This document shows positions 2,394 through 58,980 of a stretch of DNA of 64,000 bases, in pieces. The stretch's first letter is position 1. The number at the start of each line of letters is the position of its first letter. Both the position numbers and the translations under genes were made by a program. Under the pieces are notes generated by a model, which searched no databases, was not told where the DNA came from, and worked only from the letters and a program-made list of their open reading frames with translations. The DNA lies in IMG/VR virus record IMGVR_UViG_3300042923_000474, positions 62,001-126,000 of that record. One strand, written 5' to 3'.

Positions 2394-2452
2394 GCATAGA
2401 CTCCAGGCCCACCGGGGGCCTGGAGTCACTTTCACCTATGCTATTTTTTTTT
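2394..2452. terminator. Bidirectional hairpin terminator, GCATA...TATGC flanked, with a + strand T-tract
   Basis: GACTCCAGGCCC/GGGCCTGGAGTC stem between convergent genes; TATGC 2437-2441 then a T-run. Confidence 0.85.
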
Positions 2453-2455
2453 GTC

Positions 2456-5197
2456 TCAGACAGTGCTGTCGTCGTTGGAGCTGTCGTCACTGGTGCTGGA
2501 AGAATCATCCTCGGAAGAGGAATCACCCGAGTCATCACCAAAGTCGAACTCACCACCATCGCCATCGCCGTCTTCGTCGCCCATGTCGAAGTCACCGAAG
2601 TCGTCATCGCCCCCGAAGTCAGAGTCGAAGTCGTCACCACCGCTACCACCACCTGTGGTCTCTGAACCCTCACCGGCCTCAGTGCCCTCAACACGGTTAG
2701 CATCCAGACGCTCCTTGAGAGTCGCCATCTGGTTCTCACTGATGAGTGCGGCAGAGTACAGCTGTAGGCCCATGCCTTGGATGATCTTGGTAAGACGCCC
2801 TGCGTTGACCACACCGTCCATAACCAGCATGCTGCCTGGATCTTCGGCGGTGTCGTTCTTGAACAGGTTGGTAACCTCTGGCAAGATCGAGTTGCTGCGG
2901 CAGTAATCGAGCACCAGCGTAGACTTCACAGATGCCTTCAGTACAGCCACCCACTCGTTCGCACTTTCACCCGTCACGTTCGACTGCATCAGATCGTCAG
3001 GAACAATGTTGTCCAAGACTTTCTCAACAGCGGTCACGTAGTCGTCAAGATCGGTCATGCGGTTGGCAAGGCCGGTATCAGGACGAGGGAGGGTGCAGGT
3101 ATAGATCGAGAAGAAAGCTGTGATGAAATAATCTTCACCGAGCTTGGCCACAATCTTCTTGTCCATCTTGTCGACGTGGTTACCCACAGCCTTACGCATC
3201 TTATCCATGTAGCCCTTGTGGTTAAGGACCAACTTGATAAGTGTTTCGCGGATGAACAGGTTAGTGCGATCTTGCAATGCCAGTGCACGTTTGAGCGACA
3301 GTTCGTTCGAGGTCGCCATCTTGGACGAGAACTCGATCTGAGTCGACAGGTCCACAATCTCTGGTGCCAGACCAAAGCCCATGGTTTGCCGCTTACGCAG
3401 ATCTTCATCCAGATCCAGGTTGACTTCCTTGTACTCAACCGGGCGAGAGTCGATAGACACCTCGGTACCAGGGTAGTTGTCACCACCCTTCACAGATACG
3501 GCCAGACCAGAGTTCTGAGCCACTTCAACCATACGACGAGGGTTGGAGCTAGCCCATGGAATGGAGTTGCCGCGGTTACGAGCGTACTCGTGGAGAATCA
3601 TCTCCTTGGTACGAGACTTGTTAGGGTCATCCTCGTCCACTGTGATGTTGAGCGTACGGTGATCGATCGAGTTGCGGATGTGCGTTTCGATGTTCATGAA
3701 CATGGTCAGTGCACGGATAGAGGACAGGATCTTGTTGTCTTCCATCAGCGAACGGCCAGTACCGTTGTCGTTGTAGTCGTACGTCCAGTAGATCACCATG
3801 TCGGCAGGGACATAAACCACACGAGTCTGCTTACCCGCCAGCGCTCGTTCGAACATCAGGTCGTAAGCCATTTCCACACGGCTCACGGTCACGTTACCCA
3901 CCGAACCATGCAACAGACGATTCTCGATGTCACGCAGAGCCAACTCACGGAAAGCCTGCACCGCTTGCATCGTCATCAACTGTTGGGAGAAACCATCCTC
4001 CATGTTCAGCTGGTCTGCCATGTTATTCAGCATGCCAGAGACAGCGTTACGGTTGTTGAACACACCCGCTGAGATGTTACGCATGTAATCGCTACGGGCC
4101 GAACGACTGATGAAGGCGCCGAACTCATCGAGCAAGAACAGGTAACCCACAGGTTTGCTCGGACTGCCTGGACGCACTACAGGCATGCAGGATTCAGTTG
4201 GAGCACCTTTCCACAAAGGAGGACCTACCGCTTCGCGGCTGGCTTCTTCCTGACGCATCATCATGACGATGTCTTCAGGCTTGTGGTCTGGACTGTGGTA
4301 CATGGCTTCGATGTTGCCGAACATGCTGTTGCCACCAAACGACTCAATGGCCATGTTGGTTTGCGTACGCTTGATCGAGGAGACGATGTCTTCCAGCTTC
4401 ATCATCTGCGGGTTATCAAACAGCTCAGGCATCACAAAGCCTGTCAGCTTGCTGAAGTCCCACTTGTTGCCATCCATCATGGTACCCGCTACTTTGAGCG
4501 GTTCGAGCTTGTCGACAACCTCAGGCGGTCTGGACAGGCCATCCAGCATGCTCTCCAGCGTCATCTTCACGCCGGCAGCTGGAGCGGTCTTTGGACCATT
4601 GGCCATGAAGCCGCGGGGCTTGCTGATGTCGTTGTAGAGACCCTTCTCACGGAACGATTCCAACGTGATCTTGTGCGCACCCCGGCCATTGATCAAGTCG
4701 TCCAACGAGTTCTCAGGGATGACGATAGAAACGTCAGCACCTTCAGAGACTAAGGCCTTACGCAGTTTTTCCTGCAAAAGGGACTTAATCTTATAGTTCT
4801 GCTCGGCCTCCTTCAAGATTTCGAGCATCTCCTGTGCCATTTCGGCAACCAGGATATTCGGTTCAACGGCATGCTTGAGTTCGATCTTGTCGATGTCTTT
4901 GGGTGTCAGAATCAACGACAACAGAACCTGGATGCAGAGTTCAATCTCCGGCAGCATGGCCATGTGGTTTTTGTAGTCGTCGATGTTTGTAGCCATGACA
5001 TCGGCGGATTCTTGCAGGTAGCCAAAGTTACCCAAGTAAGGACTGTCGGTACGCTCGCGACTTTCGCCGTTAGGGTCGCGAATCATCTTTGACATGATGG
5101 TGTTGTTATCAACACCCGCTCGACTGTGCGGGAGTCGGGTATTGGGTGCGCCAGAACGAATGACGTTCTGAGCAGAGACTCGACCTGACGGGTTCAT
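2456..5197 (-). CDS. Portal protein, phiKZ gp129-like (start moved to ATG 5197)
   Basis: About 900 aa, head-to-head with a gp128-like gene as recalled for phiKZ-like phages; AAGGA RBS before 5197; acidic Gly/Asp C-terminal tail. Confidence 0.7.
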   Translation of the reverse strand: MNPSGRVSAQNVIRSGAPNTRLPHSRAGVDNNTIMSKMIRDPNGESRERTDSPYLGNFGYLQESADVMATNIDDYKNHMAMLPEIELCIQVLLSLILTPKDIDKIELKHAVEPNILVAEMAQEMLEILKEAEQNYKIKSLLQEKLRKALVSEGADVSIVIPENSLDDLINGRGAHKITLESFREKGLYNDISKPRGFMANGPKTAPAAGVKMTLESMLDGLSRPPEVVDKLEPLKVAGTMMDGNKWDFSKLTGFVMPELFDNPQMMKLEDIVSSIKRTQTNMAIESFGGNSMFGNIEAMYHSPDHKPEDIVMMMRQEEASREAVGPPLWKGAPTESCMPVVRPGSPSKPVGYLFLLDEFGAFISRSARSDYMRNISAGVFNNRNAVSGMLNNMADQLNMEDGFSQQLMTMQAVQAFRELALRDIENRLLHGSVGNVTVSRVEMAYDLMFERALAGKQTRVVYVPADMVIYWTYDYNDNGTGRSLMEDNKILSSIRALTMFMNIETHIRNSIDHRTLNITVDEDDPNKSRTKEMILHEYARNRGNSIPWASSNPRRMVEVAQNSGLAVSVKGGDNYPGTEVSIDSRPVEYKEVNLDLDEDLRKRQTMGFGLAPEIVDLSTQIEFSSKMATSNELSLKRALALQDRTNLFIRETLIKLVLNHKGYMDKMRKAVGNHVDKMDKKIVAKLGEDYFITAFFSIYTCTLPRPDTGLANRMTDLDDYVTAVEKVLDNIVPDDLMQSNVTGESANEWVAVLKASVKSTLVLDYCRSNSILPEVTNLFKNDTAEDPGSMLVMDGVVNAGRLTKIIQGMGLQLYSAALISENQMATLKERLDANRVEGTEAGEGSETTGGGSGGDDFDSDFGGDDDFGDFDMGDEDGDGDGGEFDFGDDSGDSSSEDDSSSTSDDSSNDDSTV

Positions 5198-5243
5198 CGT
5201 ACGTCCTTCTTTTACAGGTGTCACAATTTTTGGGGTGCTGGCG

Positions 5244-7529
5244 ATGGCCAACGACTATTATCAAATCTACCGCGATAGCGTAAAGCGGATGGCCCGAACT
5301 ATGGTCATTCGTCATGACCTCAGCGCTCAGGCTACAAACCGTTACCTCATCAATGCCGGTATTCCCGTGGGCGATGATAGACGAGGCTGGCGTTACTACA
5401 TGAATATCGCCGGACTATATCATTCTACTAATGAAATGATGCAGGTCCAAAGTCTTGACACACGGGAAATGATTGACTTCACCCGCGAGAACATGGCCAT
5501 CCACCGGGCTACGGCTCGGGGCTACGCTTACGGTACTCGCTACTACAAAGAGCTGGTGGCTCAGTGGGGGCGACAAGAGCGACTGATTAAAGGCATCATT
5601 AACCCAGTGGACATTGATGTGGCTATCAATGCTCGGGAGAATGAGATCCTCTGGATTGATCCTTTGCTCATGAGTGAGAACGAGGACAACCTCAAGTTAC
5701 TCATCCAAAGTCAGATCGATGCAACAATGGATCGCTGGCATGTCGAGATGTACTCGTTGACCGAGAGCCTCTACGACTGCTCACGCTACGTGAACCTTTA
5801 TGCCCACATGCCGGCCTTCATCGAGTTCGCTCGTTGGAAGAACAGCCGTACAGAGCGGGCACACAGCTTCTACATCCGTCAGTTCCTCGCAGCCAACGGT
5901 CGATTGGACCAATGGTTCGATGCGATGAGTCTGGAACAGCGTTTGTTCTTCTACCGCAACCTGCCTTACCTGCACCGTTACCCGGGTTGGCAGGACACGT
6001 TCGACTGGCTCAAGGTCGAGGTGTTGGAAAAACGTCTGTTCCCATTGGCCGACTATCGACTGATTCAAAACGTCGAGAACATGCCGAATGACCTGACGCC
6101 GGCTGTGGAACTGATCCGTCAGGAAACCACTGCAGACTACGCTGGGATCAAGCCTACCAAGGCCTCGGTGCGGGATGTGTTGGTGAAGCAGCAACGCTTG
6201 GCACTGCGCAACGCCGAGACGCTGGAAGAGAACGAGATCGAAACAACTCAGTTGATGAGCAATGCTCAGGTCAGCGAGATGCAGACCAAGGTGTTGGAAT
6301 CGGACGTGCTGGACATGACCGATAGCCAGATCTTTAAGCTCGAAGAGTTTCTGATCAACCACTGGGCCTATCTGGCCTTAGAGGAACGTTACCTTGCCAT
6401 CGTAACCGTTGAACACCCTCGCACCGGTGAGCCTATCCAGTTGTCTGCACTGGATGCGTTCATTCTGTTCCTGTACGTGTACAACAAGTCCGTGCTGCAA
6501 GACCTGACACTGGTACCCGACATTCATGTCAGCTGCGTGTTGAAAGATCCAAAGCCTAGCGCCAAGGAAATGTTCGATGTCTGCTGCTTGGGCAAGAATG
6601 CTTCTATCAACCACGCCAATGCACTCTGGGACATGATCCCTGAGTTCACCTCCTACATCTCTACTGAATCGTTCTACAACGCTGTGAATGCTTTGTACAA
6701 CGCCGCAGTGGATCAGCACAACTTGGCAGCCTTCCAAGGCCACTTACAAACGCGTGCTGAAGTGGAGGCCATGGGCCTTTACATGTTCATGGACTACGGC
6801 GTAAGTCTAGCTGGTGAAGTGCCATACGACGATTGGATGAATGTGCGGGGTCTGTCCACGATCCGTGACCTGAACCAGACAGAGTGTGAAGGCTTGTCTT
6901 CTGCTCTGCTGCAAAGTGCTACGGGGATGGACCTCAACGTCTCGCTGTCGTTGAACGATATCCACAAGGCCATGATCGGCATCATGCAGCGCCTGTCGTC
7001 TTATTCGGTTCACTATGTGCGCCTGATGAACGACTCGCCACTGCGTCCGATCGACCTTAAGTGGATTCGTATTGGTGACACGCTCGGTACAGGTGAAGGG
7101 CATCACGAGTTCGATATCCTGAAACTCAAGGAGATCCACAGTAAGGGTCAGCTCAAGGGTAACTCGGTATTGCCGAACCTTGACAACATGCAGGTGCAGG
7201 AGTGGGAGACGGATCTGGCGGGTACATCGATGATGATGTTCGGCCTGACGTTTGAACAGCAGACCGAGAAGCATGGCCACTCGTACATTGAGATGCCACG
7301 TCTGCGGATGTTTGAACCCGTACTGCGTCCAGTGACAGACCTGTCGGTCTACAAGCTTTCCACAGACATCATCGTGGGGCCACTGGACCCAGAGGCAGAG
7401 CACGTGGGTGAGGTGATCTCTACTCGCTACTTGTCCGGCCTGAACTACCCGAACCATGCCAGTGAACTGACACCGCTGGATCGCGTGATCACCAACGTTA
7501 ACCTCAGGGGGCTTGAGTACCCTGAATAA
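5244..7529 (+). CDS. Virion structural/baseplate wedge-like protein, phiKZ gp128-like
   Basis: 761 aa; WRYYMNIAGLYH N-terminal block recalled from this family; synteny with portal. Confidence 0.6.
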   Translation: MANDYYQIYRDSVKRMARTMVIRHDLSAQATNRYLINAGIPVGDDRRGWRYYMNIAGLYHSTNEMMQVQSLDTREMIDFTRENMAIHRATARGYAYGTRYYKELVAQWGRQERLIKGIINPVDIDVAINARENEILWIDPLLMSENEDNLKLLIQSQIDATMDRWHVEMYSLTESLYDCSRYVNLYAHMPAFIEFARWKNSRTERAHSFYIRQFLAANGRLDQWFDAMSLEQRLFFYRNLPYLHRYPGWQDTFDWLKVEVLEKRLFPLADYRLIQNVENMPNDLTPAVELIRQETTADYAGIKPTKASVRDVLVKQQRLALRNAETLEENEIETTQLMSNAQVSEMQTKVLESDVLDMTDSQIFKLEEFLINHWAYLALEERYLAIVTVEHPRTGEPIQLSALDAFILFLYVYNKSVLQDLTLVPDIHVSCVLKDPKPSAKEMFDVCCLGKNASINHANALWDMIPEFTSYISTESFYNAVNALYNAAVDQHNLAAFQGHLQTRAEVEAMGLYMFMDYGVSLAGEVPYDDWMNVRGLSTIRDLNQTECEGLSSALLQSATGMDLNVSLSLNDIHKAMIGIMQRLSSYSVHYVRLMNDSPLRPIDLKWIRIGDTLGTGEGHHEFDILKLKEIHSKGQLKGNSVLPNLDNMQVQEWETDLAGTSMMMFGLTFEQQTEKHGHSYIEMPRLRMFEPVLRPVTDLSVYKLSTDIIVGPLDPEAEHVGEVISTRYLSGLNYPNHASELTPLDRVITNVNLRGLEYPE

Positions 7530-7546
7530 GGTGACTCCCCTCTAAG

Positions 7547-7575
7547 AGACGGGCCCAGTGCCCGTCTATTTTTTT
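7547..7575 (+). terminator. Classical intrinsic terminator
   Basis: AGACGGGC-CCAGT-GCCCGTCT followed by ATTTTTTT. Confidence 0.8.
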
Positions 7576-7593
7576 GTCAAATGGAAGAACATC

Positions 7594-8814
7594 ATGAGCG
7601 AGTTCTATGCTGCTCGGGCGGCGAGACTGCCCCCCAAAGACTTTGTGTTGTTCTTGTTCAACCATGTCTCTGGCCTGAACATCAACTCCTACGAGGCTGA
7701 AGTGTCTGCCCCGCTGGGGAAAGATGCCCAAGGCCGTACGGTGGTGAACATCCGTGGATTGGGTCAACCCGGTCCTAACGGAGACGGTGGCTACATTAAC
7801 CGTGCCGAGTTCGCCTATCGTCGTACACCGCTGGATCAGATCGATCTACCTACCGACGGTAGTTTCTTTGATGTGATTGGTTCTCGTCCGACGTTCGTTG
7901 AGATCGTGGATGAGCTGCGTCGTCGTACACAGTTGGGTTGCACAGTGGCCGACTTTATTCCCACGGAGTATCGCTCTGACCAAACCACAGGTTACGTGCT
8001 CAAGGCCGACCCCAACAGTCTGCGCTTTGAAGGCCGGGTCAACATCGGCAACCCACGTCGTGCCAACATCGATGAGTTCATCCCAGCCGACATCGGTGAA
8101 CTGACCTTCGAACAGTACGACGGCATCTTTGACCTGAACTTGAATCGCATCCCGATCAACTTCGACGTCACTGAGTACCCAGACCAGATCACCAAACTGG
8201 CGAAGGGTTACAAGATCCGTACCAATGACTTGGTCCTGTTCAGCCTGTTGCAGGTGCAAGCCGACTACAGTGGTCTGCCATTGACCAACGACACAACGCC
8301 AAATGACCTGCTCAACGTCTACCAAGCGGAAGTGACCTACCACGGTCCTCTACGTCAGGATGCCGATGACAAGCATTTGTTTGCCAGTCGTGATCGGGTG
8401 ATTGAGTTGACCCCCTCCAAGGTCTATGCCCCACGGGCTCAGGGTGTGCTCAAGCTCTACTACTCCACCGATGTTCCAGCCTCCCCGGTATTGGCCAGCC
8501 AGAACATCTACGCACTGAACCTACTGTCTACGCCCGCTTCTGGCAGTGCACAGGCAGCGTTCTGGGCGCAGTGCGTGAAAGGTAGACTGTTGGACCAAAA
8601 TGGGACAGCAGGGGTTATCTCCACGGCGTTCCAAGCCGCATTTGGGATAACATATGACCCCATCCTCAAGCAGGCGTTGAAAGTGACCTATAATGGCCCC
8701 GCTCGACCTATCGATCAGGTGCCCGCTGGCAAGACGACCTGCAACGTCTGTGAGCTTTCTGTTGTGGACAGCCCACTTGACTTCATCTACGGCCCAGGCA
8801 AGGTGTACTACTGA
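7594..8814 (+). CDS. Putative virion (tail/baseplate) protein
   Basis: 406 aa ORF in the structural operon, coupled to the next gene by a TGATG overlap. Confidence 0.6.
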   Translation: MSEFYAARAARLPPKDFVLFLFNHVSGLNINSYEAEVSAPLGKDAQGRTVVNIRGLGQPGPNGDGGYINRAEFAYRRTPLDQIDLPTDGSFFDVIGSRPTFVEIVDELRRRTQLGCTVADFIPTEYRSDQTTGYVLKADPNSLRFEGRVNIGNPRRANIDEFIPADIGELTFEQYDGIFDLNLNRIPINFDVTEYPDQITKLAKGYKIRTNDLVLFSLLQVQADYSGLPLTNDTTPNDLLNVYQAEVTYHGPLRQDADDKHLFASRDRVIELTPSKVYAPRAQGVLKLYYSTDVPASPVLASQNIYALNLLSTPASGSAQAAFWAQCVKGRLLDQNGTAGVISTAFQAAFGITYDPILKQALKVTYNGPARPIDQVPAGKTTCNVCELSVVDSPLDFIYGPGKVYY

Positions 8815-10734: not shown

Positions 10735-10744
10735 GGGGCAACTC

Positions 10745-12001: not shown

Positions 12002-12432
12002 ACCTCTTTACCGCGACTACGCTGAACGAGAATGCACCCATCGGCACCCAGTCGTGGTATTCGATGGTCCCTCTGATTCAGTTGAGCTTTCCCTCGGGCA
12101 CCAACTTCGATCCTACCATGACGTGTAAGGATTTCCTCGCACAGATCATGGGTTTGGAAGTTGAGATCCGTTCCCGTATCCTGAACATGGATATCCCTGT
12201 CGTGGCTGAACAAGTCGAAGAAGCAAAGCGTGAAGGGCACAAGTCATTGCTCGTGGGCGTCATTGCCTGTGTGGTGGTGGCCAGTGTGTTGATTACCGGC
12301 GGCTACATTGTGGCAACCAGTCATCTGACCGGGGCGGCTGATGCGGGGCTGTTTGAAAAGTTCACCACCTTCATCCTGGAGATTCTCAAGATGTTGGTGT
12401 CTATGTTGAGTGGGTCCACCCCAGCAGCATAA
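11998..12432 (+). CDS. Membrane protein with two C-terminal hydrophobic helices (holin candidate)
   Basis: LLVGVIACVVVASVLITGGYIV and FTTFILEILKMLVSML; coupled to the spanin pair. Confidence 0.55.
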   Translation: MNLFTATTLNENAPIGTQSWYSMVPLIQLSFPSGTNFDPTMTCKDFLAQIMGLEVEIRSRILNMDIPVVAEQVEEAKREGHKSLLVGVIACVVVASVLITGGYIVATSHLTGAADAGLFEKFTTFILEILKMLVSMLSGSTPAA

Positions 12433-12467
12433 AGCCTGCCTGCCCCCAAAGGGGCAGGCAGTTATGC
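12427..12467. terminator. Bidirectional hairpin terminator, GCATA/TATGC flanked
   Basis: TGCCTGCCCC-CAAA-GGGGCAGGCA between convergent genes; no T-tract. Confidence 0.75.
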
Positions 12468-20472: not shown

Positions 20473-20505
20473 CCCGCTCTCCCCACGGGGAGGGCGGGCG
20501 TATGC
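20473..20505 (+). terminator. Hairpin followed by TATGC
   Basis: CCCGCTCTCCC/GGGAGGGCGGG stem; TATGC 20501-20505; tandem junction. Confidence 0.7.
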
Positions 20506-20534
20506 TATGATTCTCAATCCACAGGAGCAGTCCA

Positions 20535-24016: not shown

Positions 24017-24063
24017 GCATAGACCCCCTGCCCGCAATGGGCAGGGGGCTTGTGCCTTTATGC
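24017..24063. terminator. Bidirectional hairpin terminator
   Basis: CCCCCTGCCC-GCAAT-GGGCAGGGGG; GCATA 24017-24021, TGTGC 24051-24055 and TATGC 24059-24063. Confidence 0.75.
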
Positions 24064-27355: not shown

Positions 27356-27395
27356 CGCCCCCTAGTCTCCTAATTGGGGGCTAGGGGGTGTATGC
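27356..27395 (+). terminator. Hairpin followed by TATGC
   Basis: CGCCCCCTAGTCTCC-TAATT-GGGGGCTAGGGGGTG then TATGC. Confidence 0.7.
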
Positions 27396-27404: not shown

Positions 27405-27434
27405 CGATTTAACTGATTTTCAAACCTACATTAC
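27405..27434 (+). promoter_or_regulatory. Putative early (virion RNAP) promoter
   Basis: CGATTTAACT-N6-CAAACCTACATTAC; near copy at 30445-30474; ends in a TATTAC-like core as recalled for phiKZ early promoters. Confidence 0.7.
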
Positions 27435-27488
27435 CAACATGAAGCGCGTCAATAAGCTTCTTCATTATCCACAGAAAGGAGTCTAGTT

Positions 27489-28825: not shown

Positions 28826-28855
28826 GCCCCCGGCCAAGTGCCGGGGGCTTTATAC
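28826..28855 (+). terminator. Hairpin followed by TTTATAC (variant motif)
   Basis: GCCCCCGGC-CAAGT-GCCGGGGGC. Confidence 0.55.
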
Positions 28856-31230: not shown

Positions 31231-31264
31231 GGTCCGGCTCTCAGGTGAGGGTCGGACCTTATGC
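31231..31264 (+). terminator. Hairpin followed by TTATGC
   Basis: GGTCCGGCTCTC-AGGT-GAGGGTCGGACC. Confidence 0.7.
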
Positions 31265-32055: not shown

Positions 32056-32111
32056 GCATAACCGCCCTCCCATTACGGGAGGGCGGCTACCTGCTTGCTA
32101 TTTATTTTTTT
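32056..32111. terminator. Bidirectional hairpin terminator
   Basis: CCGCCCTCCC-ATTAC-GGGAGGGCGG; TATGC on the minus side, distal T-tract on the plus side. Confidence 0.75.
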
Positions 32112-36746: not shown

Positions 36747-36774
36747 GCATAAAGGCCCACCCCGAAGGATGGGC
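36747..36774 (-). terminator. UUCG hairpin followed by CTTTATGC on the minus strand
   Basis: Minus strand GCCCATCC-TTCG-GGGTGGGC-CTT-TATGC. Confidence 0.7.
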
Positions 36775-36943
36775 ACAATGGGGGCTTATGCCCGAGGCAG
36801 GCTGGTAGCCAAGGCTACCCAGAAGTCACGCCAAACTTTCTGCACGTCCAGAAGCGCTTTCGCATTTCCATACGGGCAGACGAGAGGGATAGACTGCTGT
36901 GGGATTACAACAGGAAGCTTTCGGTTCATGACGCCCCCAGACA

Positions 36944-41825: not shown

Positions 41826-41869
41826 GCATAGCCTCCCTCTCCCTACGGGGAGAGGGAGTGCGCTTATGC
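41826..41869. terminator. Bidirectional hairpin terminator
   Basis: CTCCCTCTCCC-TACG-GGGAGAGGGAG flanked by GCATA and TATGC. Confidence 0.75.
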
Positions 41870-42568: not shown

Positions 42569-42659
42569 GGGGATAGTCCTTTTAATGGATTGAGGGAATT
42601 GCACAAACAATCCAACGAGCCTGTTCGGCATAAAGACCAGCCCGAAGGCTGGCCTCTAC

Positions 42660-47673: not shown

Positions 47674-47711
47674 GCATACTCCCCGCTCCCTAGGGAGCGG
47701 GGAGCCTATGC
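47674..47711. terminator. Bidirectional hairpin terminator
   Basis: GCATA-CTCCCCGCTCC-CTAG-GGAGCGGGGAG-CC-TATGC. Confidence 0.8.
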
Positions 47712-50612: not shown

Positions 50613-50623
50613 CCGTATTACCG

Positions 50624-50645: not shown

Positions 50646-50660
50646 CAAGGATTATTGCCG

Positions 50661-51005: not shown

Positions 51006-51022
51006 CACCTAAGGGGTGCCTC

Positions 51023-52311: not shown

Positions 52312-53114
52312 TGCGCAGCACTATCTTGATTGAACTGGATGCTTTGCTCGATACGCGCTTGGGTGCCATGCGTGTGTTCAGTGAAAGTCTCTGGACCAAC
52401 ACCTGGAACGATCCGGCGTATTACAATCGGTTGGTGGATGACTTCGACCATTACGGTGCGGGGACCACTCTGATGTGGCGCGGGATTTACGAACAGCGTG
52501 GTTCTCTGCGAGATGCGGAGAGTGGTCAACTCTTGGTGCTCAAGAACTCCATCATGACATGCATGGTGGGTAAGATCGGCATGCACCTACGTCAACTGTA
52601 CTCAACCAAAACCACCTCGCCTAACTTCATCGGTGCCGACGTGAAGGTTAACGTCTGGCCGTACGAGTTGGAACAGGTAGACATGGATGAGATCGTTTTG
52701 GCCCTGGAACAAATGATGGTCCCGGACGAAAGCGGGTCTGACGTTGAGATCGTTGATACCCAAATCAGTTGCGTGCGTTTGTCGCCTGCTGAATTGACGT
52801 TAGACGAGATCCGAGAGAAGTTCAGTCGGGTGGTGATGTACAACTTCAACGAGTGGTGGGACATTCAGGCTAAAGCAATCTACGAGGCGGAGCGCGGTGC
52901 TACGCTAACCGAGTTTGTGGTGCCTGAACTTCTGCGTTTGGACAAGACCCGCAAGATCGACAAGAAGGTCTTTGTCGATGACACAGGCAACATGTACAAC
53001 CCATTCACCGAGACTAAGCGCACGCTGTCTGTTTCGATGAACCTGAACTTCATGTCTCCGCTGTACTTCTCTGTCCCTAACCCCCAAGAGCTTATCAAGG
53101 ACTTGAAGGCATAA
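52311..53114 (+). CDS. Hypothetical protein with a HAD-like N-terminal motif
   Basis: ILIELDALLDTRLG. Confidence 0.6.
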   Translation: MRSTILIELDALLDTRLGAMRVFSESLWTNTWNDPAYYNRLVDDFDHYGAGTTLMWRGIYEQRGSLRDAESGQLLVLKNSIMTCMVGKIGMHLRQLYSTKTTSPNFIGADVKVNVWPYELEQVDMDEIVLALEQMMVPDESGSDVEIVDTQISCVRLSPAELTLDEIREKFSRVVMYNFNEWWDIQAKAIYEAERGATLTEFVVPELLRLDKTRKIDKKVFVDDTGNMYNPFTETKRTLSVSMNLNFMSPLYFSVPNPQELIKDLKA

Positions 53115-53150
53115 ACCCTCCCCCTCCCTGCAAGGGGAGGGGGAGTATGC
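53109..53150. terminator. Bidirectional hairpin terminator
   Basis: GCATA..CTCCCCCTCCC-TGCAAG-GGGAGGGGGAG-TATGC. Confidence 0.8.
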
Positions 53151-53153
53151 TCG

Positions 53154-53663
53154 TCACTTATCGTTTTCGAGCAAGTTGGTTCTGTCACGGGAGAAGCGGC
53201 TCTGCATGGCGCTGTACGTTATTGTGTGGCTGCCGGTATCCATTTCACCGGGTACCACTTCAATGTCGGGCAATTCGCTGTCCAGAGGGATAGCTGCACG
53301 CTGTACGGGTGCGCCTTCGACACGCATGACCGAACCGCTGCCTTGGCGGTTGGCCAACTCCAACAGAGCCTGTGCCACGATCTGGTCTTTCTTGGCATTG
53401 TTGTCGTCGGTCTTCTGACGCATGACACCCAGCTCTTGGGCGTCAAAGTCTTTCATCGTGTCGAGCAACATCTTCACACCGTCTTTATCGGTGGGGACTT
53501 TACCACCCGGTGCGAGTTCATCCATCATCTTCAAACGCACTTGTTGCGTAAGGCGAAGACGTTCTTCGTGGGTGGCGGGCATCACCGCGGGAACGATGGG
53601 GGTTACGTTCTCCAAGTGGGTTCCGTCTTCAACCACGCCTAAGTCTTTCAGTGCCTGATCCAT
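53154..53663 (-). CDS. Hypothetical protein (169 aa)
   Basis: Start moved to ATG 53663 with GAGG RBS. Confidence 0.65.
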   Translation of the reverse strand: MDQALKDLGVVEDGTHLENVTPIVPAVMPATHEERLRLTQQVRLKMMDELAPGGKVPTDKDGVKMLLDTMKDFDAQELGVMRQKTDDNNAKKDQIVAQALLELANRQGSGSVMRVEGAPVQRAAIPLDSELPDIEVVPGEMDTGSHTITYSAMQSRFSRDRTNLLENDK

Positions 53664-53673
53664 TGTAATGCCC

Positions 53674-53703
53674 TCTAATAACTCTTTCTCAAACCTAAAA
53701 CAT
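53674..53703 (+). promoter_or_regulatory. Possible early-type promoter, degenerate copy 3
   Basis: TAACT-N6-CAAACCTA with the same spacing as 27405 and 30445. Confidence 0.45.
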
Positions 53704-53766
53704 CTATTTGAATACCTACCTATAAGGTTTTGGTTATTCACCTAGGATGGATATGTGAGGCGTAAC

Positions 53767-54318
53767 ATGCTCGCACAATCATTTAGCTTTCCGGCTACTG
53801 GACGCCAATCCATGTTTCATCGATTGCTACGCTGGCTAGGATTTGGACAGGGGGACGCTCCTGCTCCAGATGAACGATTGGACAAGATGAATGCTATGCT
53901 TGTACAGGTAGACCGACTTCGACGTCTGATCGGTCAACACACTTGGAAAGGTCGCAGGGGAACCTGGCGTACCTCCAAGTTGGAAAGTGTTCATCCGAAC
54001 ATTTTCTACCTCATCAACACCGTACGGAGTACCACAGATGCAGTCATATCGAAATCGCCACCCCCGCGTGAAGCAATCCTGTCACGCAAGTTCATGGACA
54101 ACTTGTATCCCGTAACACTTGATGGCTATCTAACCGATGAGCAGGGACTGACCTGTCCACCGGAAACGATCATGCGGGAGCTGATAAAGGCCATCGAAGA
54201 TTTGGTCAACAACATCCGCATGTACGACCAAACGGACTCGACGTACTACGATTACTATCTTCGTCAGTGCTCGACTCTATTTGGCGAGTTGGAGATCATA
54301 ACAAAAACATACCTCTAA
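53767..54318 (+). CDS. Hypothetical protein (183 aa)
   Basis: GAGG RBS before ATG 53767. Confidence 0.65.
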   Translation: MLAQSFSFPATGRQSMFHRLLRWLGFGQGDAPAPDERLDKMNAMLVQVDRLRRLIGQHTWKGRRGTWRTSKLESVHPNIFYLINTVRSTTDAVISKSPPPREAILSRKFMDNLYPVTLDGYLTDEQGLTCPPETIMRELIKAIEDLVNNIRMYDQTDSTYYDYYLRQCSTLFGELEIITKTYL

Positions 54319-54347
54319 CTCAGCCAAGGTTACGAAGGACTTTTTGG

Positions 54348-55040
54348 ATGAGTGCTAAAGGTAATGACATCTACACGATGTTGGCTACCCCCGACAAACG
54401 GATTCGAGAAGCCCATGGCATTCTGTCACGGATGTATCGTCTCATTTTGTGGGAGTTGCAGATTACCCCTTACAAGTGGAATCTTTTCCTGATCAACTAT
54501 TTGGACAAGTTGACTGACCAACTCAATCTGTCCCAAGACCGGGTAACCAATGAGCGGAACAATCTGCGCAAAGGCCTATCCGATCCTGACATGACTTTCG
54601 AGATGCTTACTCGTGGTCTGTCTGTGTTGGCCCCCAGGGGGATGATCTTTAAGGTGGAACTGTTTTACGACAACGACGTTACCGTTCATTCCAGCGTTGA
54701 CATGCTGGCACCTGATACCGGTGACGTGGGCAAGTTGTCTGGGCTGTATCAGAACCTCTGCGCGATTATGGGTAAGGACGTCAATCATCTGGAACCTGAG
54801 ATTGAAGCCTACCTATGTAACAGTCTCGTACGCGAAGATACAAAGGGGCGCAAGAAGGGCAACGACAAGGGCAACCTGCGTCGGGAGTTGCCTGGGATGC
54901 AGATGACATGGGACGTGTTCAAGAAGGGCTTGCGGGTCTTGGCACCGAACATGACGTGCATCAGTGTAGAGCTTAAGTGGAACCGTAACCGGACCACTCG
55001 GCACATGTTGCGAATTGCAACGCCGAAGAAAGCTGCGTAA
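54348..55040 (+). CDS. Hypothetical protein with an internally duplicated domain
   Basis: NERNNLRKGL..PDMTFEML.RGLSVLAP echoed by NDKGNLRREL..MQMTWDVFKKGLRVLAP. Confidence 0.7.
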   Translation: MSAKGNDIYTMLATPDKRIREAHGILSRMYRLILWELQITPYKWNLFLINYLDKLTDQLNLSQDRVTNERNNLRKGLSDPDMTFEMLTRGLSVLAPRGMIFKVELFYDNDVTVHSSVDMLAPDTGDVGKLSGLYQNLCAIMGKDVNHLEPEIEAYLCNSLVREDTKGRKKGNDKGNLRRELPGMQMTWDVFKKGLRVLAPNMTCISVELKWNRNRTTRHMLRIATPKKAA

Positions 55041-55044
55041 CATG

Positions 55045-55093
55045 CTCCCCCACCTTCGGGTGGGGGAGTTTATGCTGCCTGTTTATTTTTTTT
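55045..55093 (+). terminator. UUCG hairpin followed by TTTATGC and a distal T-tract
   Basis: CTCCCCCACC-TTCG-GGTGGGGGAG-TT-TATGC. Confidence 0.8.
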
Positions 55094-55131
55094 GTCCAAT
55101 TCTATGAATCTTTTCCTACGAGTCCGATGCC

Positions 55132-56145
55132 ATGCGTACTACCCTAGCTCCTACCACGTTGAGCATCGGCTCAACGGACAAGGTTCTTGAGAAGAGTGCT
55201 TCTGAAGTTACCAGCGCTGCAGACAACACGTCCATCAAGGACATGCTGGTTGGTTTAAAGGATGAAACGGTTGATGCCCTGCGTAAGACACCCAAGCTTG
55301 CCTCGCAGCTCACCAAGCTCGTTGTAGACGCCAAGACAGGCAAGCTCAATGCAACCAATGCGTTGTCTCGTCTGAGTTCGGTGTTTGGCAACAAAGGTGG
55401 CATCATTGACAAGCTGTCGACTAAGACAGTCTCTCTGATGTCTGACACACTCGGGATGGACCCCAAACTGTCCAAGCGTGTCATGATGACGGTCAAGGAT
55501 GTGGCCACAGGTCGCAACACCAGCATCCTTGGTTACTCTGCCAACGTGTCGTCTTCTCAGGGGCTGGTAAACACCATACAGCGTCTGCTGGGCGACAAAG
55601 ATGTAATCGGCTACGTTGACCTCGATGCTGAGGCTTCGTTGCTCTCAGGCCTGCTCAAGGAAGCTGTGAAGGCAGGTATCCCTCAATCGGTTGACATCCT
55701 GCTCAAGGAAGCCACGAGCGAGGAAACAAAAAGAAGAGTCATCAGTGAAAACGTCTACGCAGTTGTGTTCAGCGGTAACCTGAACACAGTAGAGAAATTG
55801 ACCACGCACATGACACCTGAACAAATCAGGGCGCAGTACCCACACTTTGCCAGGGATTTCTTGGCACAATTCGCTCTCACCCCAGCAGACACTGTGGCCG
55901 AGTATGCGAACATCAAAACCCGAATCATCACTCTGTTCAACCAGATTGATGTCCATTGGGATAAGTCCTTGCGTGACGGGGCTTGGGTTCCTGCACTTGC
56001 TCCTTTCAGCAAGGCATCTGAAGACGCTACGATCATCTTCAATACGTCCCCAGCGTATCGTAGTGCTTTGGTCCTGGCCAAGAACTTCCCCTCCATTGAG
56101 ATCAAATCCTGGATCAAAAAGCACTACGCCTTTTTCCCCGGTTAA
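55132..56145 (+). CDS. Putative virion structural protein (337 aa)
   Basis: Long ORF in the tail gene neighbourhood. Confidence 0.6.
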   Translation: MRTTLAPTTLSIGSTDKVLEKSASEVTSAADNTSIKDMLVGLKDETVDALRKTPKLASQLTKLVVDAKTGKLNATNALSRLSSVFGNKGGIIDKLSTKTVSLMSDTLGMDPKLSKRVMMTVKDVATGRNTSILGYSANVSSSQGLVNTIQRLLGDKDVIGYVDLDAEASLLSGLLKEAVKAGIPQSVDILLKEATSEETKRRVISENVYAVVFSGNLNTVEKLTTHMTPEQIRAQYPHFARDFLAQFALTPADTVAEYANIKTRIITLFNQIDVHWDKSLRDGAWVPALAPFSKASEDATIIFNTSPAYRSALVLAKNFPSIEIKSWIKKHYAFFPG

Positions 56146-56160
56146 TAAAGGCGAGCCGAC

Positions 56161-56739
56161 ATGGAAGATAAAATCCTGATTGTGCCAATCAGAAAGTTTG
56201 ACCAGTACAGTGTGTCCTTCAATCAGGAGTTCACGAAAGCGTTGGGCAAACAGCATTGGCTCACTAACGAAAACTACGTCTACTACTTGGGAGAGAAGTA
56301 TTCCAATGAGTGGGTTGTGGTTCCTCGCGGATACGCCACTGATGGCGCCACTGTTCCACCTGCGTTTCAAAGTATCCTGCCTGTGTTTGGCAAACATGGC
56401 TCTGCCGTCATTCTCCATGACTGGCTGTGTGAGTACGGCTTTGTGTGGCATCGCAACCTCATGTCGGGAGAAGTCACAAAACGTGTACTGACCCGTGAGG
56501 AGATCGACAATGTCTTCTTAGAAGCGTTGGCGGTTATCGAGATGGACCCCGGTACCATTCACTGGGTGAAGTTAGGCTTTGCTACCCACCGTGCACTTTC
56601 GCGTCCTAAAGTTCCCAACATGGACCACGCCAAACAACTCCTGGAGTTTAACTACGCGCAATCGAAGGGCTACCACCCTTTCGACGGCAGTTTGTTATAC
56701 GACGTGATTGATCACCCCCCGCTCTGGGCAATCGCATAA
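56161..56739 (+). CDS. DUF1353 family protein
   Basis: VVPRGYATDGATVP...GSAVILHDWLC...TREEIDNVFLEAL. Confidence 0.85.
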   Translation: MEDKILIVPIRKFDQYSVSFNQEFTKALGKQHWLTNENYVYYLGEKYSNEWVVVPRGYATDGATVPPAFQSILPVFGKHGSAVILHDWLCEYGFVWHRNLMSGEVTKRVLTREEIDNVFLEALAVIEMDPGTIHWVKLGFATHRALSRPKVPNMDHAKQLLEFNYAQSKGYHPFDGSLLYDVIDHPPLWAIA

Positions 56740-56777
56740 AGGTCACTGCCTCTCCCTTGCGGGAGAGGCAGCTATGC
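56734..56777. terminator. Bidirectional hairpin terminator
   Basis: GCATA..CTGCCTCTCCC-TTGC-GGGAGAGGCAG-C-TATGC. Confidence 0.8.
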
Positions 56778-56779
56778 CG

Positions 56780-58912
56780 TCAGTTGTTAGAGACGGTACC
56801 TTTGGTGAAGAGGTTCAACATTCGAACAGGCATCCACCCACCCACCTTGTTCTGGAAGGCAGAGGTTGTTGTCCACGACTCGTAACTGGAGATCATCTTC
56901 GTCATGGCGATCTTAAGCTTCTGCGTGGTGTAGATCTGCTCTTGCAGCGTCAGACCACCGAAGACTGCCATCAACTCGGAATACTTGTTCGAGTCATCCC
57001 ACGTGGTTGGGTCAGTGAGCGTAGCCGCCCCTTGGAAGAAACGGTTTTCACCCACCACAGCGCCAGTAGCACCGTCAGCCATCTTGCCCACAGTCTGCTT
57101 CACACCGCTCCAGAAGCCCGCCTCGGTAGAGATCGGCATGGTAACAATGCTAGACAGGTCCACAATCGAAAACGTCACAGTGACGCCCAGAGGGTCACCG
57201 TCCTGGTTACGACCCATGGTACCCACACCGGTAGTGATGGTGAGGTCACGGATCATGCCCAGTTTGATCGTGTGCCGGCTACGCGAGTAGGCTTCACAGA
57301 TGAACGGAGACGTGTACGACTGCTTACCTGTGGCCAGAGGCAGAACACCAGCGAGCAACATCGAGACCGGAATCCAGATGTTCTTGAAGCGACTGATAGG
57401 GTCACCCGACCAGCTACGCAACTCGATGGTGTACGACGGAGCAGGCAGCGATGCTGCAGCGCTCTGCCATGTCTGCGGAATGTCAACGAAGGCGTTACCC
57501 ATCAGGGCTGTCAGGTTGGACACACCAATCATGTCCAGACCGCCAGCCATCATCCCCTTAACAGCGCCTGCCACCTCATCGATCACGCCGATACCCGTTT
57601 GGAACTGGGCAGCGTTAAACATCACCGAACGAGCCCGAGCAGTCATGCCGTTAGCGTTCTGAGAGATCTCAGATTCACCGACGGTGTTACTGAACGAGGT
57701 GGTGGTAGGGCCTGTGGAATCCACGCGGAAGGTTACGAATTCAGAGCCATCGTTCATCGAGGCCTTTTCGTGTTCTTCCATGGCATCAGTGAAGCTCCAC
57801 TTCGCCATCGTACTCGGGTCGGCAATCTTCTTACCCGTGGAGTCCACCTGTACGTTGGTTTCGTTCTCCACCTTAAAGGAGTTGACCTGCCGCTCCAATG
57901 CCTCGGTTGAGATGTTCTCGAACTGACTGCCCTGCGCATTGAGATAACGACTGACGTAGTCTCGCACGTTACCCACGTTGGTGTCCGTCAGGGCACTTAA
58001 GTAGGCAGCATTGGTCCAGTTACGGAACGCATCGACAAAGGCTCCCTTGGAGGTTGCCTGAATCGCCAGTTCGTTCACCGACTCTTGGAACTTGAGTGCC
58101 AGTCGGTTGTAACGGTTGGCCACACCGAACAAGTCAATACCACCGTCCTTACGGAAGATGTCAGGGAGCTGTTCGTTGTAGTGCTTGATCTCCTCCATCC
58201 GCGCTTGGGCTTCTTCCTTGGTCTCATCGCGGCCACCGACACGGGGAATGATCCCCATGTTGACAGCAATGGAGTTGGCAATGTTGTTAGCTGCCGACCA
58301 GTAGTTGTGCATGGTAGGGTCGAGGTAGTAGAACCGCGACACCGACGAACCCAACAGGAAGCTGATTGCCTTACCCGCAAACATCACAGGAGCGTAGGCA
58401 AAACCTACCACCCAACCGAGTGCCTGACCCATCCGGTAGAACAAGCCAGGACCTTTACCTGTACGCGCAATGACCGAAGCCTCTGGGTCGTAGAAGGTAA
58501 AGAAGAACGAGAGCAGGGAGTTGAACTTGGGGACACCGAAACGCATGGTGATATACTCACCGGTGTCATCGTACATCTCCGAGTAGGCCCTGCCCATACC
58601 CCTCGAAGCAGTTGCCCCCGATCGAATGTCATCCGCCATGTCGTTGGCCGCAATAAGCGGCTTCATGACCGGGTTGTCAATCGAGTAGGAGAACATGGTG
58701 TTCAGGCCAGCGACTGTCATGTCAGCATAAACAGTGAACTGGGGTGGTGGGTTGATGCAGCGTGCACCGCCCAGAGTGGTGTCGGCGAATTTGATACGTG
58801 CGCCAGACTCCAAACGCGCTCGTCTATCGTTACTCGACCTGCCCGCTCGGGCGATCAGAAAGCTGGAGCGCACCCAGCTGTCGTTGCGAATACCCGCAAG
58901 AGCTGTTGCCAT
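56780..58912 (-). CDS. Virion tail/baseplate hub-like protein, phiKZ gp182-like
   Basis: 710 aa, directly downstream of the gp181-like gene; GGARCINPPPQFT block. Confidence 0.6.
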   Translation of the reverse strand: MATALAGIRNDSWVRSSFLIARAGRSSNDRRARLESGARIKFADTTLGGARCINPPPQFTVYADMTVAGLNTMFSYSIDNPVMKPLIAANDMADDIRSGATASRGMGRAYSEMYDDTGEYITMRFGVPKFNSLLSFFFTFYDPEASVIARTGKGPGLFYRMGQALGWVVGFAYAPVMFAGKAISFLLGSSVSRFYYLDPTMHNYWSAANNIANSIAVNMGIIPRVGGRDETKEEAQARMEEIKHYNEQLPDIFRKDGGIDLFGVANRYNRLALKFQESVNELAIQATSKGAFVDAFRNWTNAAYLSALTDTNVGNVRDYVSRYLNAQGSQFENISTEALERQVNSFKVENETNVQVDSTGKKIADPSTMAKWSFTDAMEEHEKASMNDGSEFVTFRVDSTGPTTTSFSNTVGESEISQNANGMTARARSVMFNAAQFQTGIGVIDEVAGAVKGMMAGGLDMIGVSNLTALMGNAFVDIPQTWQSAAASLPAPSYTIELRSWSGDPISRFKNIWIPVSMLLAGVLPLATGKQSYTSPFICEAYSRSRHTIKLGMIRDLTITTGVGTMGRNQDGDPLGVTVTFSIVDLSSIVTMPISTEAGFWSGVKQTVGKMADGATGAVVGENRFFQGAATLTDPTTWDDSNKYSELMAVFGGLTLQEQIYTTQKLKIAMTKMISSYESWTTTSAFQNKVGGWMPVRMLNLFTKGTVSNN

Positions 58913-58941
58913 GGTAGAGTCCTTTAATAAAGGGGGTTAGG

Positions 58942-58980
58942 TCATAAAGTAGACAGGGCGCCCCCGAAGGAGCACCCTGA
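58942..58980 (-). terminator. UUCG hairpin followed by CTACTTTATGA on the minus strand
   Basis: Minus strand CAGGGTGCTCC-TTCG-GGGGCGCCCTG. Confidence 0.6.

What the first reader, a model, noticed from the sequence alone, without database searches (positions are those of the whole stretch)
2394..58980. Intergenic hairpins carry a TATGC signature in place of U-tracts, oriented with transcription
Seen: GC-rich hairpins at about 2399, 12437, 20473, 24024, 27356, 31231, 32062, 36755, 41833, 47679, 53118, 55045 and 56746, with variants TATAC at 28826 and TATGA at 58955. Most are followed within 0-10 nt by TATGC. Most convergent junctions carry it on both strands (GCATA...TATGC), and tandem ones usually only downstream. 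Few have U-tracts. Caveat: several GCATAA copies double as Ala plus stop codon. Knowledge: TATG is the reported phiKZ non-virion RNAP late promoter core. Inference: a phage-RNAP-specific terminator class, or hairpin-assisted re-initiation sites that would give antisense RNAs at convergent junctions.
Basis: partly seen in the sequence, partly recalled or inferred. Interest (0 to 1): 0.7.

Follow-up and report, generated by a model that had tools for sequence, protein, structure and literature searches.

The report
phiKZ-type hairpin-TATGC transcription terminators
The GC-rich hairpins followed by TATGC are this jumbo phage's copies of the conserved transcription terminator already mapped in phiKZ and 201phi2-1, so the pattern is real but largely known, and it marks where transcripts end rather than where they restart.

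Summary
The window is part of a 231.7-kb, 54% GC phiKZ-like (Chimalliviridae) phage genome that encodes both phage RNA polymerases. Intergenic GC-rich hairpins are followed within 0-10 nt by TATGC (extended consensus Y-TATG-C-Y-G-T). The motif sits on the side where a gene ends: 41 of 67 such hairpin sides carry it against 7 of 45 other sides, and chance gives 0.7%. In the window, 7 of 8 convergent junctions carry it on both strands; tandem junctions carry it only downstream.

Stem mismatches are G·U in the transcribed strand (9 against 1). Stems covary in two related phages while TATGC does not change.

The same motif (hairpin plus YTTATKYYGT) was published for 61 phiKZ terminators and 59 in 201phi2-1. 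Laying the published phiKZ coordinates on its genome, 3' ends fall within -2 to +3 nt of the TAT. Of 76 hairpin-TATG sites, 29 hold a 3' end and only 1 a 5' end.

So these are terminators, not re-initiation sites. "Phage-polymerase-specific" is unproven: eight 201phi2-1 terminators also work in uninfected cells.

Possibly new: TATGCCGT is conserved after hairpins in 81 related metagenomic loci (31-62% GC), which suggests sequence-specific recognition.

The parts
2394..2441 (.). Bidirectional terminator at a convergent junction. GCATA at 2394-2398, hairpin at 2399-2427, TATGC at 2437-2441. A T9 run follows at 2444-2452.
   Evidence: (-29.6 kcal/mol, z -5.4)
7544..7575 (+). Canonical-looking terminator: hairpin directly followed by T7, with no TATGC. 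Listed as the contrast case in the window.
12427..12467 (.). Bidirectional terminator. GCATAA at 12427-12432 doubles as Ala plus stop. Hairpin at 12436-12461, TATGC at 12463-12467.
20473..20509 (+). Unidirectional terminator at a tandem junction. Hairpin at 20473-20498 with a U·G wobble on the + strand, TATGC at 20501-20505. A second TATG follows immediately at 20506-20509, in the same layout as the phiKZ terminator plus late promoter P049.
24017..24063 (.). Bidirectional terminator. GCATA at 24017-24021, hairpin at 24024-24048, TATGC at 24059-24063.
27356..27395 (+). Unidirectional terminator. A 15-bp hairpin at 27356-27390, TATGC at 27391-27395. An early-promoter-like motif follows at 27421-27441.
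   Evidence: (-35.1 kcal/mol, z -5.0)
28826..28855 (+). Unidirectional terminator with a variant tail. Hairpin at 28826-28848, then TTTATAC.
31231..31264 (+). Unidirectional terminator. Hairpin at 31231-31258, TATGC at 31260-31264.
   Evidence: (-23 kcal/mol, z -4.1)
32056..32089 (-). Terminator at a convergent junction with TATGC on the - strand only (GCATA at 32056-32060). Hairpin at 32059-32089. The + side has no TATGC, but a T7 run lies at 32105-32111.
36747..36791 (.). A - strand unit: hairpin with G·U pairs followed by CUUUAUGC (GCATA at 36747-36751). A weaker + strand TATGC lies at 36787-36791. Gene context on the + strand is uncertain.
41826..41869 (.). Bidirectional terminator. GCATA at 41826-41830, hairpin at 41833-41858, TATGC at 41865-41869.
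42628..42655 (-). GCATA at 42628-42632, hairpin at 42634-42655. Its one stem mismatch is G·U on the - strand.
47674..47711 (.). Bidirectional terminator. GCATA at 47674-47678, hairpin at 47679-47704, TATGC at 47707-47711. In orthologs, 4 of 19 pairs change on both sides while TATGCC is invariant.
53109..53150 (.). Bidirectional terminator. GCATAA at 53109-53114 doubles as Ala plus stop. Hairpin at 53118-53145, TATGC at 53146-53150.
55045..55075 (+). Unidirectional terminator. Hairpin at 55045-55068, TATGC at 55071-55075. A conserved T8 run follows at 55086-55093, then a conserved block containing TCTATGA, a candidate late promoter for the gene starting at 55132.
56734..56777 (.). Bidirectional terminator. 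GCATAA at 56734-56739, hairpin at 56746-56771, TATGC at 56773-56777. In orthologs, 7 of 16 pairs change on both sides.
58942..58983 (-). Unidirectional - strand terminator with a variant tail, UUUAUGA (+ strand coordinates 58942-58946). Hairpin at 58950-58983. It lies between the homologs of phiKZ gp181 and gp182, the same position as the mapped phiKZ terminator T087.
   Evidence: (-25.5 kcal/mol, z -4.9)

Best explanation
These are the conserved intrinsic-type transcription terminators of phiKZ-like (Chimalliviridae) jumbo phages.

Proposed mechanism:
- The nascent RNA folds into a stable GC-rich hairpin, usually 9-13 bp with a tetraloop. In this genome the 5' arm is C-rich and the 3' arm G-rich.
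- The short, weak U/A-rich segment that follows (Y)UAU takes the place of a long U-tract.
- The transcript ends within or just after UAUG(C).
- At convergent gene pairs one hairpin serves both directions, so the tail appears on both strands as GCATA...TATGC. At tandem junctions it appears only downstream.

Shown here: the anatomy, the orientation rule, RNA-level selection, covariation and family-wide conservation.

Shown in phiKZ and 201phi2-1 by others: 3' ends map there, and some of these elements terminate host RNAP in reporter assays.

Inferred: this phage's elements act the same way, and the conserved G-C-C-G-T beyond the U/A segment adds a sequence-specific contribution (a pause or release signal, or a protein contact) rather than being neutral.
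For: 1. Context. The genome is a phiKZ relative with complete nvRNAP and vRNAP gene sets, chimallin and a major capsid protein.
2. Enrichment and orientation. 41 of 67 gene-end sides carry TATGC against 7 of 45 other sides. Convergent junctions carry it on both strands in 17 of 22 cases. Tandem-plus junctions split 21 against 3.
3. RNA-level structure. Stem mismatches in unidirectional units are G·U in the sense strand 9 times and in the antisense strand once. The sense-strand fold is more stable in 23 of 30 cases that differ (Wilcoxon p = 0.003).
4. Orthologs at about 78% and 70% nucleotide identity keep the hairpins through compensatory changes (4 of 19 and 7 of 16 pairs), while TATGC is invariant at the four sites with a TATGC tail, and the fifth keeps its variant tail (TCATAAAG on the + strand).
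5. The extended consensus Y-TATG-C-Y-G-T equals the tail of the published phiKZ terminator motif BCCYCCCCHWWDGGGRRGGBYTTATKYYGT, found in 61 terminators (PMC10914365). The 201phi2-1 motif A (n = 59) resembles it (PMC11512511).
6. Published phiKZ TTS coordinates laid on the phiKZ genome cluster from -2 to +3 nt around the last T of TTAT. 29 of 76 hairpin-TATG sites hold a TTS within 5 nt.
7. In 81 related IMG/VR loci, 297 of 930 hairpin sides carry TATG against 24 expected. The top tail words are TATGC, TTATG, ATGCC, TGCCG and GCCGT. One-sided units keep TATG-C-C-G-T.
Against: - There are no RNA data for this phage. Most of the 20 listed public runs are DNA-type (some of unknown kind), and of the three laid, the one labelled RNA behaves as DNA contigs.
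- ONT-cappable-seq 3' ends cannot separate true termination from cleavage followed by trimming back to a protective hairpin.
- The spacing between stem and TATG varies from 0 to 10 nt, which is loose for a strictly coupled hairpin-and-release mechanism.
- About half of tandem junctions with gaps of 20 nt or more have no such unit.
- My gene calls are home-made, so a few junction classes may be wrong.
Confidence: 0.85

Rival explanations
1. Re-initiation sites. The TATG after the hairpin is an nvRNAP late-promoter core, with the start at the G. Polymerase restarts there, feeding the next gene at tandem junctions and producing antisense RNA at convergent ones.
For: - TATG is the established nvRNAP late-promoter core, with the TSS at the G (PMC12809450).
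- In my check of phiKZ TSS coordinates, 51 of 123 lie at the G of a TATG or one base after it.
- Some terminators are followed at once by a further TATG: window 20506-20509, and phiKZ P049 and P075.
- 7 of 14 residues of the gp123 TATG pocket are identical in this phage, including the Phe that stacks on G+1.
Against: - Only 1 of 76 phiKZ hairpin-TATG sites has a mapped primary 5' end within 2 nt of its G, whereas 29 have a 3' end within 5 nt.
- Adjacent late promoters use a separate TATG 5-20 nt further on.
- At 17 of 22 convergent junctions the motif points into the 3' end of the opposing gene.
- Divergent junctions, where promoters are needed, mostly lack it (11 of 18 none).
- The conservation extends to C-C-G-T, which late promoters do not share.
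- Away from hairpins, TATG is not enriched in the sense orientation upstream of genes (32 sense against 27 antisense).
Confidence: 0.04
2. RNA processing or stability element rather than a site of polymerase release. Transcripts read through, an endoribonuclease cuts at or after UAUGC, and the hairpin protects the upstream fragment from 3' exonucleases.
For: - An 8-nt conserved sequence next to a hairpin would suit a sequence-specific nuclease or RNA-binding protein.
- 3'-end mapping alone cannot tell termination from processing (methods in PMC10914365).
- Phages of this family encode ribonuclease-like proteins. The window ORF at 45647-47302 matches a PHROG annotated as ribonuclease.
Against: - The published TTS calls required a drop in read coverage of at least 20% across the site.
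- Eight 201phi2-1 terminators placed between two reporter genes strongly reduced downstream expression in uninfected cells, with no phage nuclease present.
- The anatomy is that of an intrinsic terminator: ARNold classed most motif-bearing phiKZ sites as intrinsic.
Confidence: 0.08
3. A DNA-level palindromic element unrelated to transcript ends. Possibilities are a protein-binding or cruciform site, an N4-like DNA-hairpin promoter, or a REP/MITE-like repeat that spread through intergenic regions.
For: - The elements are repeated, palindromic and intergenic.
- GCATA...TATGC is itself an inverted repeat.
Against: - At tandem junctions the tail is one-sided and follows the direction of transcription.
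- Wobble pairs are G·U in the transcribed strand 9 to 1. On DNA that asymmetry has no meaning.
- Stem sequences differ between sites and between orthologs while pairing is kept. This is selection on structure, not copies of one repeat.
- The spacings on the two sides of a hairpin differ, so GCATA and TATGC are not a simple extension of the stem.
Confidence: 0.03

Closest known systems
Conserved phiKZ terminator motif (Putzeys et al. 2024, Microlife, PMC10914365; 61 terminators) and 201phi2-1 terminator motif A (PMC11512511; 59 terminators)
   Same: - GC-rich stem-loop whose 5' arm is C-rich and 3' arm G-rich, matching the published phiKZ motif.
- The tail YTTATKYYGT corresponds to Y-TATG-C-Y-G-T here.
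- The elements lie after genes.
- Bidirectional pairs occur at convergent genes.
- The host phage belongs to the same family and carries two phage RNAPs.
   Different: - This phage has 54% GC against 37% in phiKZ. The U-rich part is shorter here, often only UAU directly on the stem.
- G and C after TAT are near-invariant here: G follows in 46 of the 53 terminator-direction tails that hold TAT, and C follows TATG in 41 of 47. In phiKZ the G follows in about half of cases.
- No RNA ends have been mapped for this phage.
Canonical bacterial intrinsic (Rho-independent) terminators
   Same: - A stable GC-rich RNA hairpin followed by a weak U/A-rich hybrid.
- Factor-independent in reporter assays (201phi2-1 elements in an uninfected host).
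- Can be bidirectional.
   Different: - There is no 7-9 nt U-tract.
- A specific, family-wide conserved 8-nt tail (TATGCCGT) is present, which bacterial terminators lack.
- One window site (7544-7575) does have the canonical hairpin plus T7.
phiKZ nvRNAP late promoter core TATG (Ceyssens 2014 and Yakunina 2015, as cited in PMC12809450)
   Same: The same tetranucleotide on the non-template strand. In phiKZ many mapped 3' ends fall at the U just before the G, which is the register in which the promoter complex holds TATG at -3 to +1.
   Different: - Primary 5' ends do not map at the terminators' TATG (1 of 76).
- The terminator tail continues C-C-G-T.
- The orientation at convergent junctions makes no sense for a promoter.
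Sequence-specific (class II) pause/termination signal of T7 RNA polymerase (from my own knowledge, not checked here)
   Same: A phage polymerase responding to a short conserved sequence at a termination site.
   Different: The T7 class II signal needs no hairpin and belongs to a single-subunit polymerase. No sequence similarity is claimed.

Membership tests
phiKZ-type conserved terminator (Putzeys 2024 motif) | GC-rich stem-loop with a C-rich 5' arm and a G-rich 3' arm, and a short loop | tested here: met
   Stems of 9-15 bp, mostly tetraloops, energies of -23 to -35 kcal/mol.
phiKZ-type conserved terminator (Putzeys 2024 motif) | Tail YTTATKYYGT directly after the stem | tested here: met
   The position matrix gives Y, TATG, C (41 of 47), Y, G, T. 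The most common spacing is 1-2 nt.
phiKZ-type conserved terminator (Putzeys 2024 motif) | Placed after gene ends and oriented with transcription; bidirectional at convergent pairs | tested here: met
phiKZ-type conserved terminator (Putzeys 2024 motif) | RNA 3' ends accumulate at the element during infection | not testable with these tools
   No RNA run holds this phage. The feature is met in phiKZ itself: TTS lie -2 to +3 nt around TAT, and 29 of 76 sites hold one.
phiKZ-type conserved terminator (Putzeys 2024 motif) | The host genome is a Chimalliviridae phage with vRNAP and nvRNAP | tested here: met
   Homologs of gp55, gp68, gp71, gp73, gp74, gp123, gp80, gp149, gp178, gp180, chimallin and the major capsid protein are present.
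Canonical intrinsic terminator | U-tract of about 7-9 nt immediately after the stem | tested here: not met
   Only 9 of 67 gene-end sides have T4 or longer, and 4 have T5 or longer, within about 20 nt. The usual tail is (T)TATGC.
nvRNAP late promoter | TATG with transcription starting at the G, placed upstream of the gene it drives | tested here: not met
   TATG is present, but 17 of 22 convergent junctions point it into the opposing gene. In phiKZ, 1 of 76 hairpin-TATG sites has a TSS.
N4-type DNA-hairpin promoter or DNA cruciform element | The structure acts on DNA, so there should be no strand asymmetry of wobble pairs | tested here: not met
   G·U falls in the sense strand 9 to 1, and the sense-strand RNA is more stable in 23 cases against 7.
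REP/MITE-like intergenic repeat | Copies of one sequence, placed regardless of the direction of transcription | tested here: not met
   Stems differ between sites and covary between orthologs. The tail follows the direction of transcription.

The most novel reading that the evidence does not exclude
TATGCCGT is a sequence-specific termination or pause signal read by the phage's own multisubunit RNA polymerases across the whole Chimalliviridae family.

One possible route is the gp123 beta-lobe pocket, the same pocket that holds non-template TATG at -3 to +1 in late-promoter complexes. When an elongating polymerase reaches TATG just after a hairpin, it would stall with the RNA ending at the U before G and then release. 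One tetranucleotide would then mean 'start' or 'stop' depending on the hairpin.

My evidence does not exclude this:
- The 8-mer is conserved in one-sided units over 31-62% GC.
- 10 of 33 phiKZ TATG terminators end at the U before G, and none at the G itself.
- Half of the pocket residues are kept in this phage.

Against it:
- The pocket is reported as incomplete in the transcribing complex.
- The stem-to-TATG spacing is loose.
- Some of these terminators work with host RNAP.
Probability: 0.15. Interest if true: 0.75.

Novelty: new member of a known kind. Interest (0 to 1): 0.3.

Why it matters
For this genome the practical value is annotation. The hairpin-TATGC units mark transcript ends and operon boundaries, including strand, in an uncultured jumbo phage. 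Together with the early-promoter-like motif they give a first transcription map without any RNA data.

The motif also works as a recognisable signature of phiKZ-like phages in metagenomes.

The broader point concerns mechanism. An 8-nt tail, TATGCCGT, is conserved after terminator hairpins in 81 related loci spanning 31-62% GC. It shares its first four bases with the nvRNAP promoter core. Termination by these non-canonical polymerases has not been studied biochemically in any paper I found. The conserved tail gives a defined sequence to mutate.

Tried and rejected
- Near-identity DNA search of the phage collection found nothing. The phage is identified only by protein similarity.
- Public runs: most of the 20 listed are DNA-type (some of unknown kind). 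The one labelled RNA-Seq (X11) carries a roughly 90%-identical relative as assembled contigs and is flagged as probably DNA. No transcript ends could be read from it.
- Selection against TATG or TATGC inside genes: both are about 2-fold depleted against synonymous-codon shuffles, on both strands. Control words with TAT (TATAC, TATGA) are depleted equally. This is general TA avoidance, not evidence of function.
- Enrichment of hairpin-free TATG upstream of genes, as a sign of late promoters: 32 sense against 27 antisense, so there is no signal.
- Conservation of the gp123 pocket: 7 of 14 residues are identical, and the alignment is uncertain around residues 398-406. The result is inconclusive.
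- Rfam: no family matches the window.
- Loci without TATG tails (L041, L055) were checked for an alternative tail. They simply lack intergenic hairpins in the stretch sampled.
- The supplementary tables of the two journal papers are not held. I used the bioRxiv supplement for phiKZ and did not read T119-T130, P005-P007 or P127-P149. The phiKZ counts therefore cover about 250 kb of the 280 kb genome.
Full report
**What the window is.** The window is bases 62001-126000 of a single 231,724-bp contig with 54% GC. Its large proteins match PHROGs and tblastn hits of phiKZ-like jumbo phages, and the closest record is Pseudomonas phage pPa_SNUABM_DT01 at 49% amino-acid identity. The genome encodes homologs of all five phiKZ non-virion RNAP subunits, four virion RNAP subunits, chimallin and the major capsid protein. 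The best-matching public runs are soil metagenomes. This is therefore an uncultured Chimalliviridae phage that should transcribe its genes with its own two polymerases.

**The observation.** The hairpins are strong, at -23 to -35 kcal/mol, with z-scores of -4 to -5.4 against dinucleotide shuffles. Only the 36755 site is weak, with z -1.0 on the + strand and -1.6 on the - strand.

TATGC is a rare word. The window holds 50 copies against 77 +/- 9 expected. The genome holds 198, of which 89 lie in the roughly 12.5% that is non-coding.

I made rough gene calls and split the sides of 56 intergenic GC hairpins by whether a gene ends upstream of that side. Of 67 such "terminator-direction" sides, 41 carry TATGC within about 17 nt, against 7 of 45 other sides (Fisher p = 1.8e-6). 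Chance is 0.7% per side.

A junction-by-junction scan with RNAfold gives the same picture.

| Junction type | Window | Genome |
|---|---|---|
| Convergent | 7 of 8 on both strands | 17 of 22 on both strands |
| Tandem-plus | 6 '+ only', 0 '- only' | 21 '+ only', 3 '- only' |
| Divergent | 4 of 6 none, 2 weak | 11 of 18 none |

Only three window copies double as Ala plus stop. In relative L007 the GCATA at 56734 persists although the stop codon has moved.

**Anatomy.** Aligned on TATG, the consensus is Y-TATG-C-Y-G-T-Y-A. The stem ends most often 1-2 nt before the T, with a range of 0-10 nt. The spacings on the two sides of a bidirectional hairpin differ, so GCATA and TATGC are separate flank elements rather than a longer stem.

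**RNA or DNA.** In unidirectional units, stem mismatches are G·U in the transcribed strand nine times and in the opposite strand once. The sense-strand RNA fold is the more stable in 23 cases against 7 (Wilcoxon p = 0.003). Two related IMG/VR contigs have about 78% and 70% nucleotide identity in these regions. They keep the hairpins through compensatory changes, 4 of 19 pairs at 47679 and 7 of 16 at 56746, while TATGC is invariant at the four sites with a TATGC tail, and the fifth (58955) keeps its variant tail. The structure is selected as RNA, in the direction of transcription.

**What is known.** Putzeys et al. (Microlife 2024, PMC10914365) mapped 133 termination sites in phiKZ by ONT-cappable-seq. 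They reported that 61 share a stem-loop followed by a TTAT region, with the motif BCCYCCCCHWWDGGGRRGGBYTTATKYYGT. Its tail reads TAT-K-Y-Y-G-T, which matches TAT-G-C-Y-G-T here.

The 201phi2-1 study (PMC11512511) found a closely similar motif in 59 of 132 terminators and 15 bidirectional sites. It also showed that eight terminators strongly terminate between two reporter genes in uninfected P. chlororaphis. The class is thus already described, and at least some members do not need a phage polymerase.

**Published ends laid on the phiKZ genome.** I fetched the phiKZ genome. I then entered 121 TTS and 123 TSS coordinates from the bioRxiv supplement.
- 3' ends cluster from -2 to +3 nt around the last T of TTAT. 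For tails with TATG the counts are 10 at the U, none at the G, and 18 at +2 or +3.
- Of 76 hairpin-TATG sites in the covered region, 29 have a 3' end within 5 nt on the same strand. Only 1 has a primary 5' end within 2 nt of the G.
- As a check on the register, 51 of 123 TSSs do lie at the G of a TATG or one base after it.
- Late promoters next to terminators use a separate TATG 5-20 nt further on (P049, P054, P075). The window site 20501-20509, TATGC followed by TATG, has the same layout.

3' ends map there and 5' ends do not.

**How far the motif reaches.** A profile of the gp182-homolog protein brought in 81 IMG/VR loci, 2 close relatives and 79 at 29-39% identity, with 31-62% GC.
- Of 930 hairpin sides, 297 have TATG within about 12 nt, against 24 expected.
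- The commonest tail words are TATGC, TTATG, ATGCC, TTTAT, TGCCG and GCCGT.
- Among 395 distinct hairpins, 78 carry the tail on one side only. These still show C, C, G, T after TATG at 51-65% each.

The CCGT is therefore not just the reverse complement of an opposing stop codon. An 8-nt sequence kept over this range of base composition suggests recognition by a conserved phage component. I could not identify which.

**Mechanism and its limits.** The best-supported reading is an intrinsic-type terminator in which a strong hairpin plus a short weak U/A segment ends the transcript at UAUG(C). I hold this at 0.85.

Whether the conserved G-C-C-G-T is read by the phage polymerases is open. The idea that the gp123 pocket that binds promoter TATG also stalls elongating polymerase at terminator TATG fits the register of many phiKZ 3' ends. 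It also fits the partial conservation of the pocket (7 of 14 residues). Against it, the pocket is described as incomplete in the transcribing complex, the spacing is loose, and host RNAP also stops at some of these elements. I give it 0.15.

The rivals are processing instead of termination (0.08), re-initiation (0.04) and a DNA-level element (0.03). They are set out with their tests in the Rival explanations section.

**Verdict.** On novelty, this is a new member of a known kind. Interest is modest, at 0.3. What may be worth following up is the family-wide TATGCCGT tail and the unexplained + strand T-run.

Noticed in passing
window 2444-2452, 7569-7575, 32105-32111, 55086-55093; genome-wide list: Runs of T6 to T11, usually followed by GT, begin 12-19 nt after the terminator stem at 12 of 42 + strand units and 0 of 25 - strand units. 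They occur even at convergent junctions where no + strand gene follows. The phiKZ terminator tails T016, T019, T025, T034, T082, T090, T100 and T110 show the same thing. The run at 55086 is conserved in both relatives. It may be a second stop signal for + strand early transcription or the upstream part of early promoters. This remains unexplained.
   Followed up: partly
window 27421-27441 (+); ten more copies elsewhere in the genome: A conserved motif of about 21 nt, roughly RARACCTANANTATCAANNTG. All 11 copies are on the + strand, and 9 of the 11 lie 44-105 nt upstream of a + strand gene start. It sometimes follows a terminator and a T-run directly. It is probably this phage's early (virion RNAP) promoter, the counterpart of the AT-rich phiKZ early promoter.
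   Followed up: partly
window 55094-55112 (+): The block CAATTCTATGAATCTTT between the 55045 terminator and the gene starting at 55132 is identical in the window and in relatives L008 and L007, although the flanks differ. It is a candidate late promoter, with its TATG 26 nt before the start codon.
   Followed up: no
window 58942-58983 (-): The hairpin between the homologs of phiKZ gp181 and gp182 lies where phiKZ has terminator T087. It is also where the 201phi2-1 paper reports a 5'UTR-derived sRNA conserved upstream of gp182 homologs. Distant relatives L010 and L015 also have a hairpin about 60 nt before this gene.
   Followed up: partly
window 7544-7575 (+): One terminator in the window has the classical form, a hairpin directly followed by T7 with no TATGC. 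At least two terminator types therefore coexist in this phage.
   Followed up: no
whole genome, all intergenic hairpins: In this genome the 5' arm of the stems is almost always C-rich and the 3' arm G-rich, whichever strand is read. Across the 79 related loci this bias does not hold: 62 are C-rich and 86 G-rich.
   Followed up: partly
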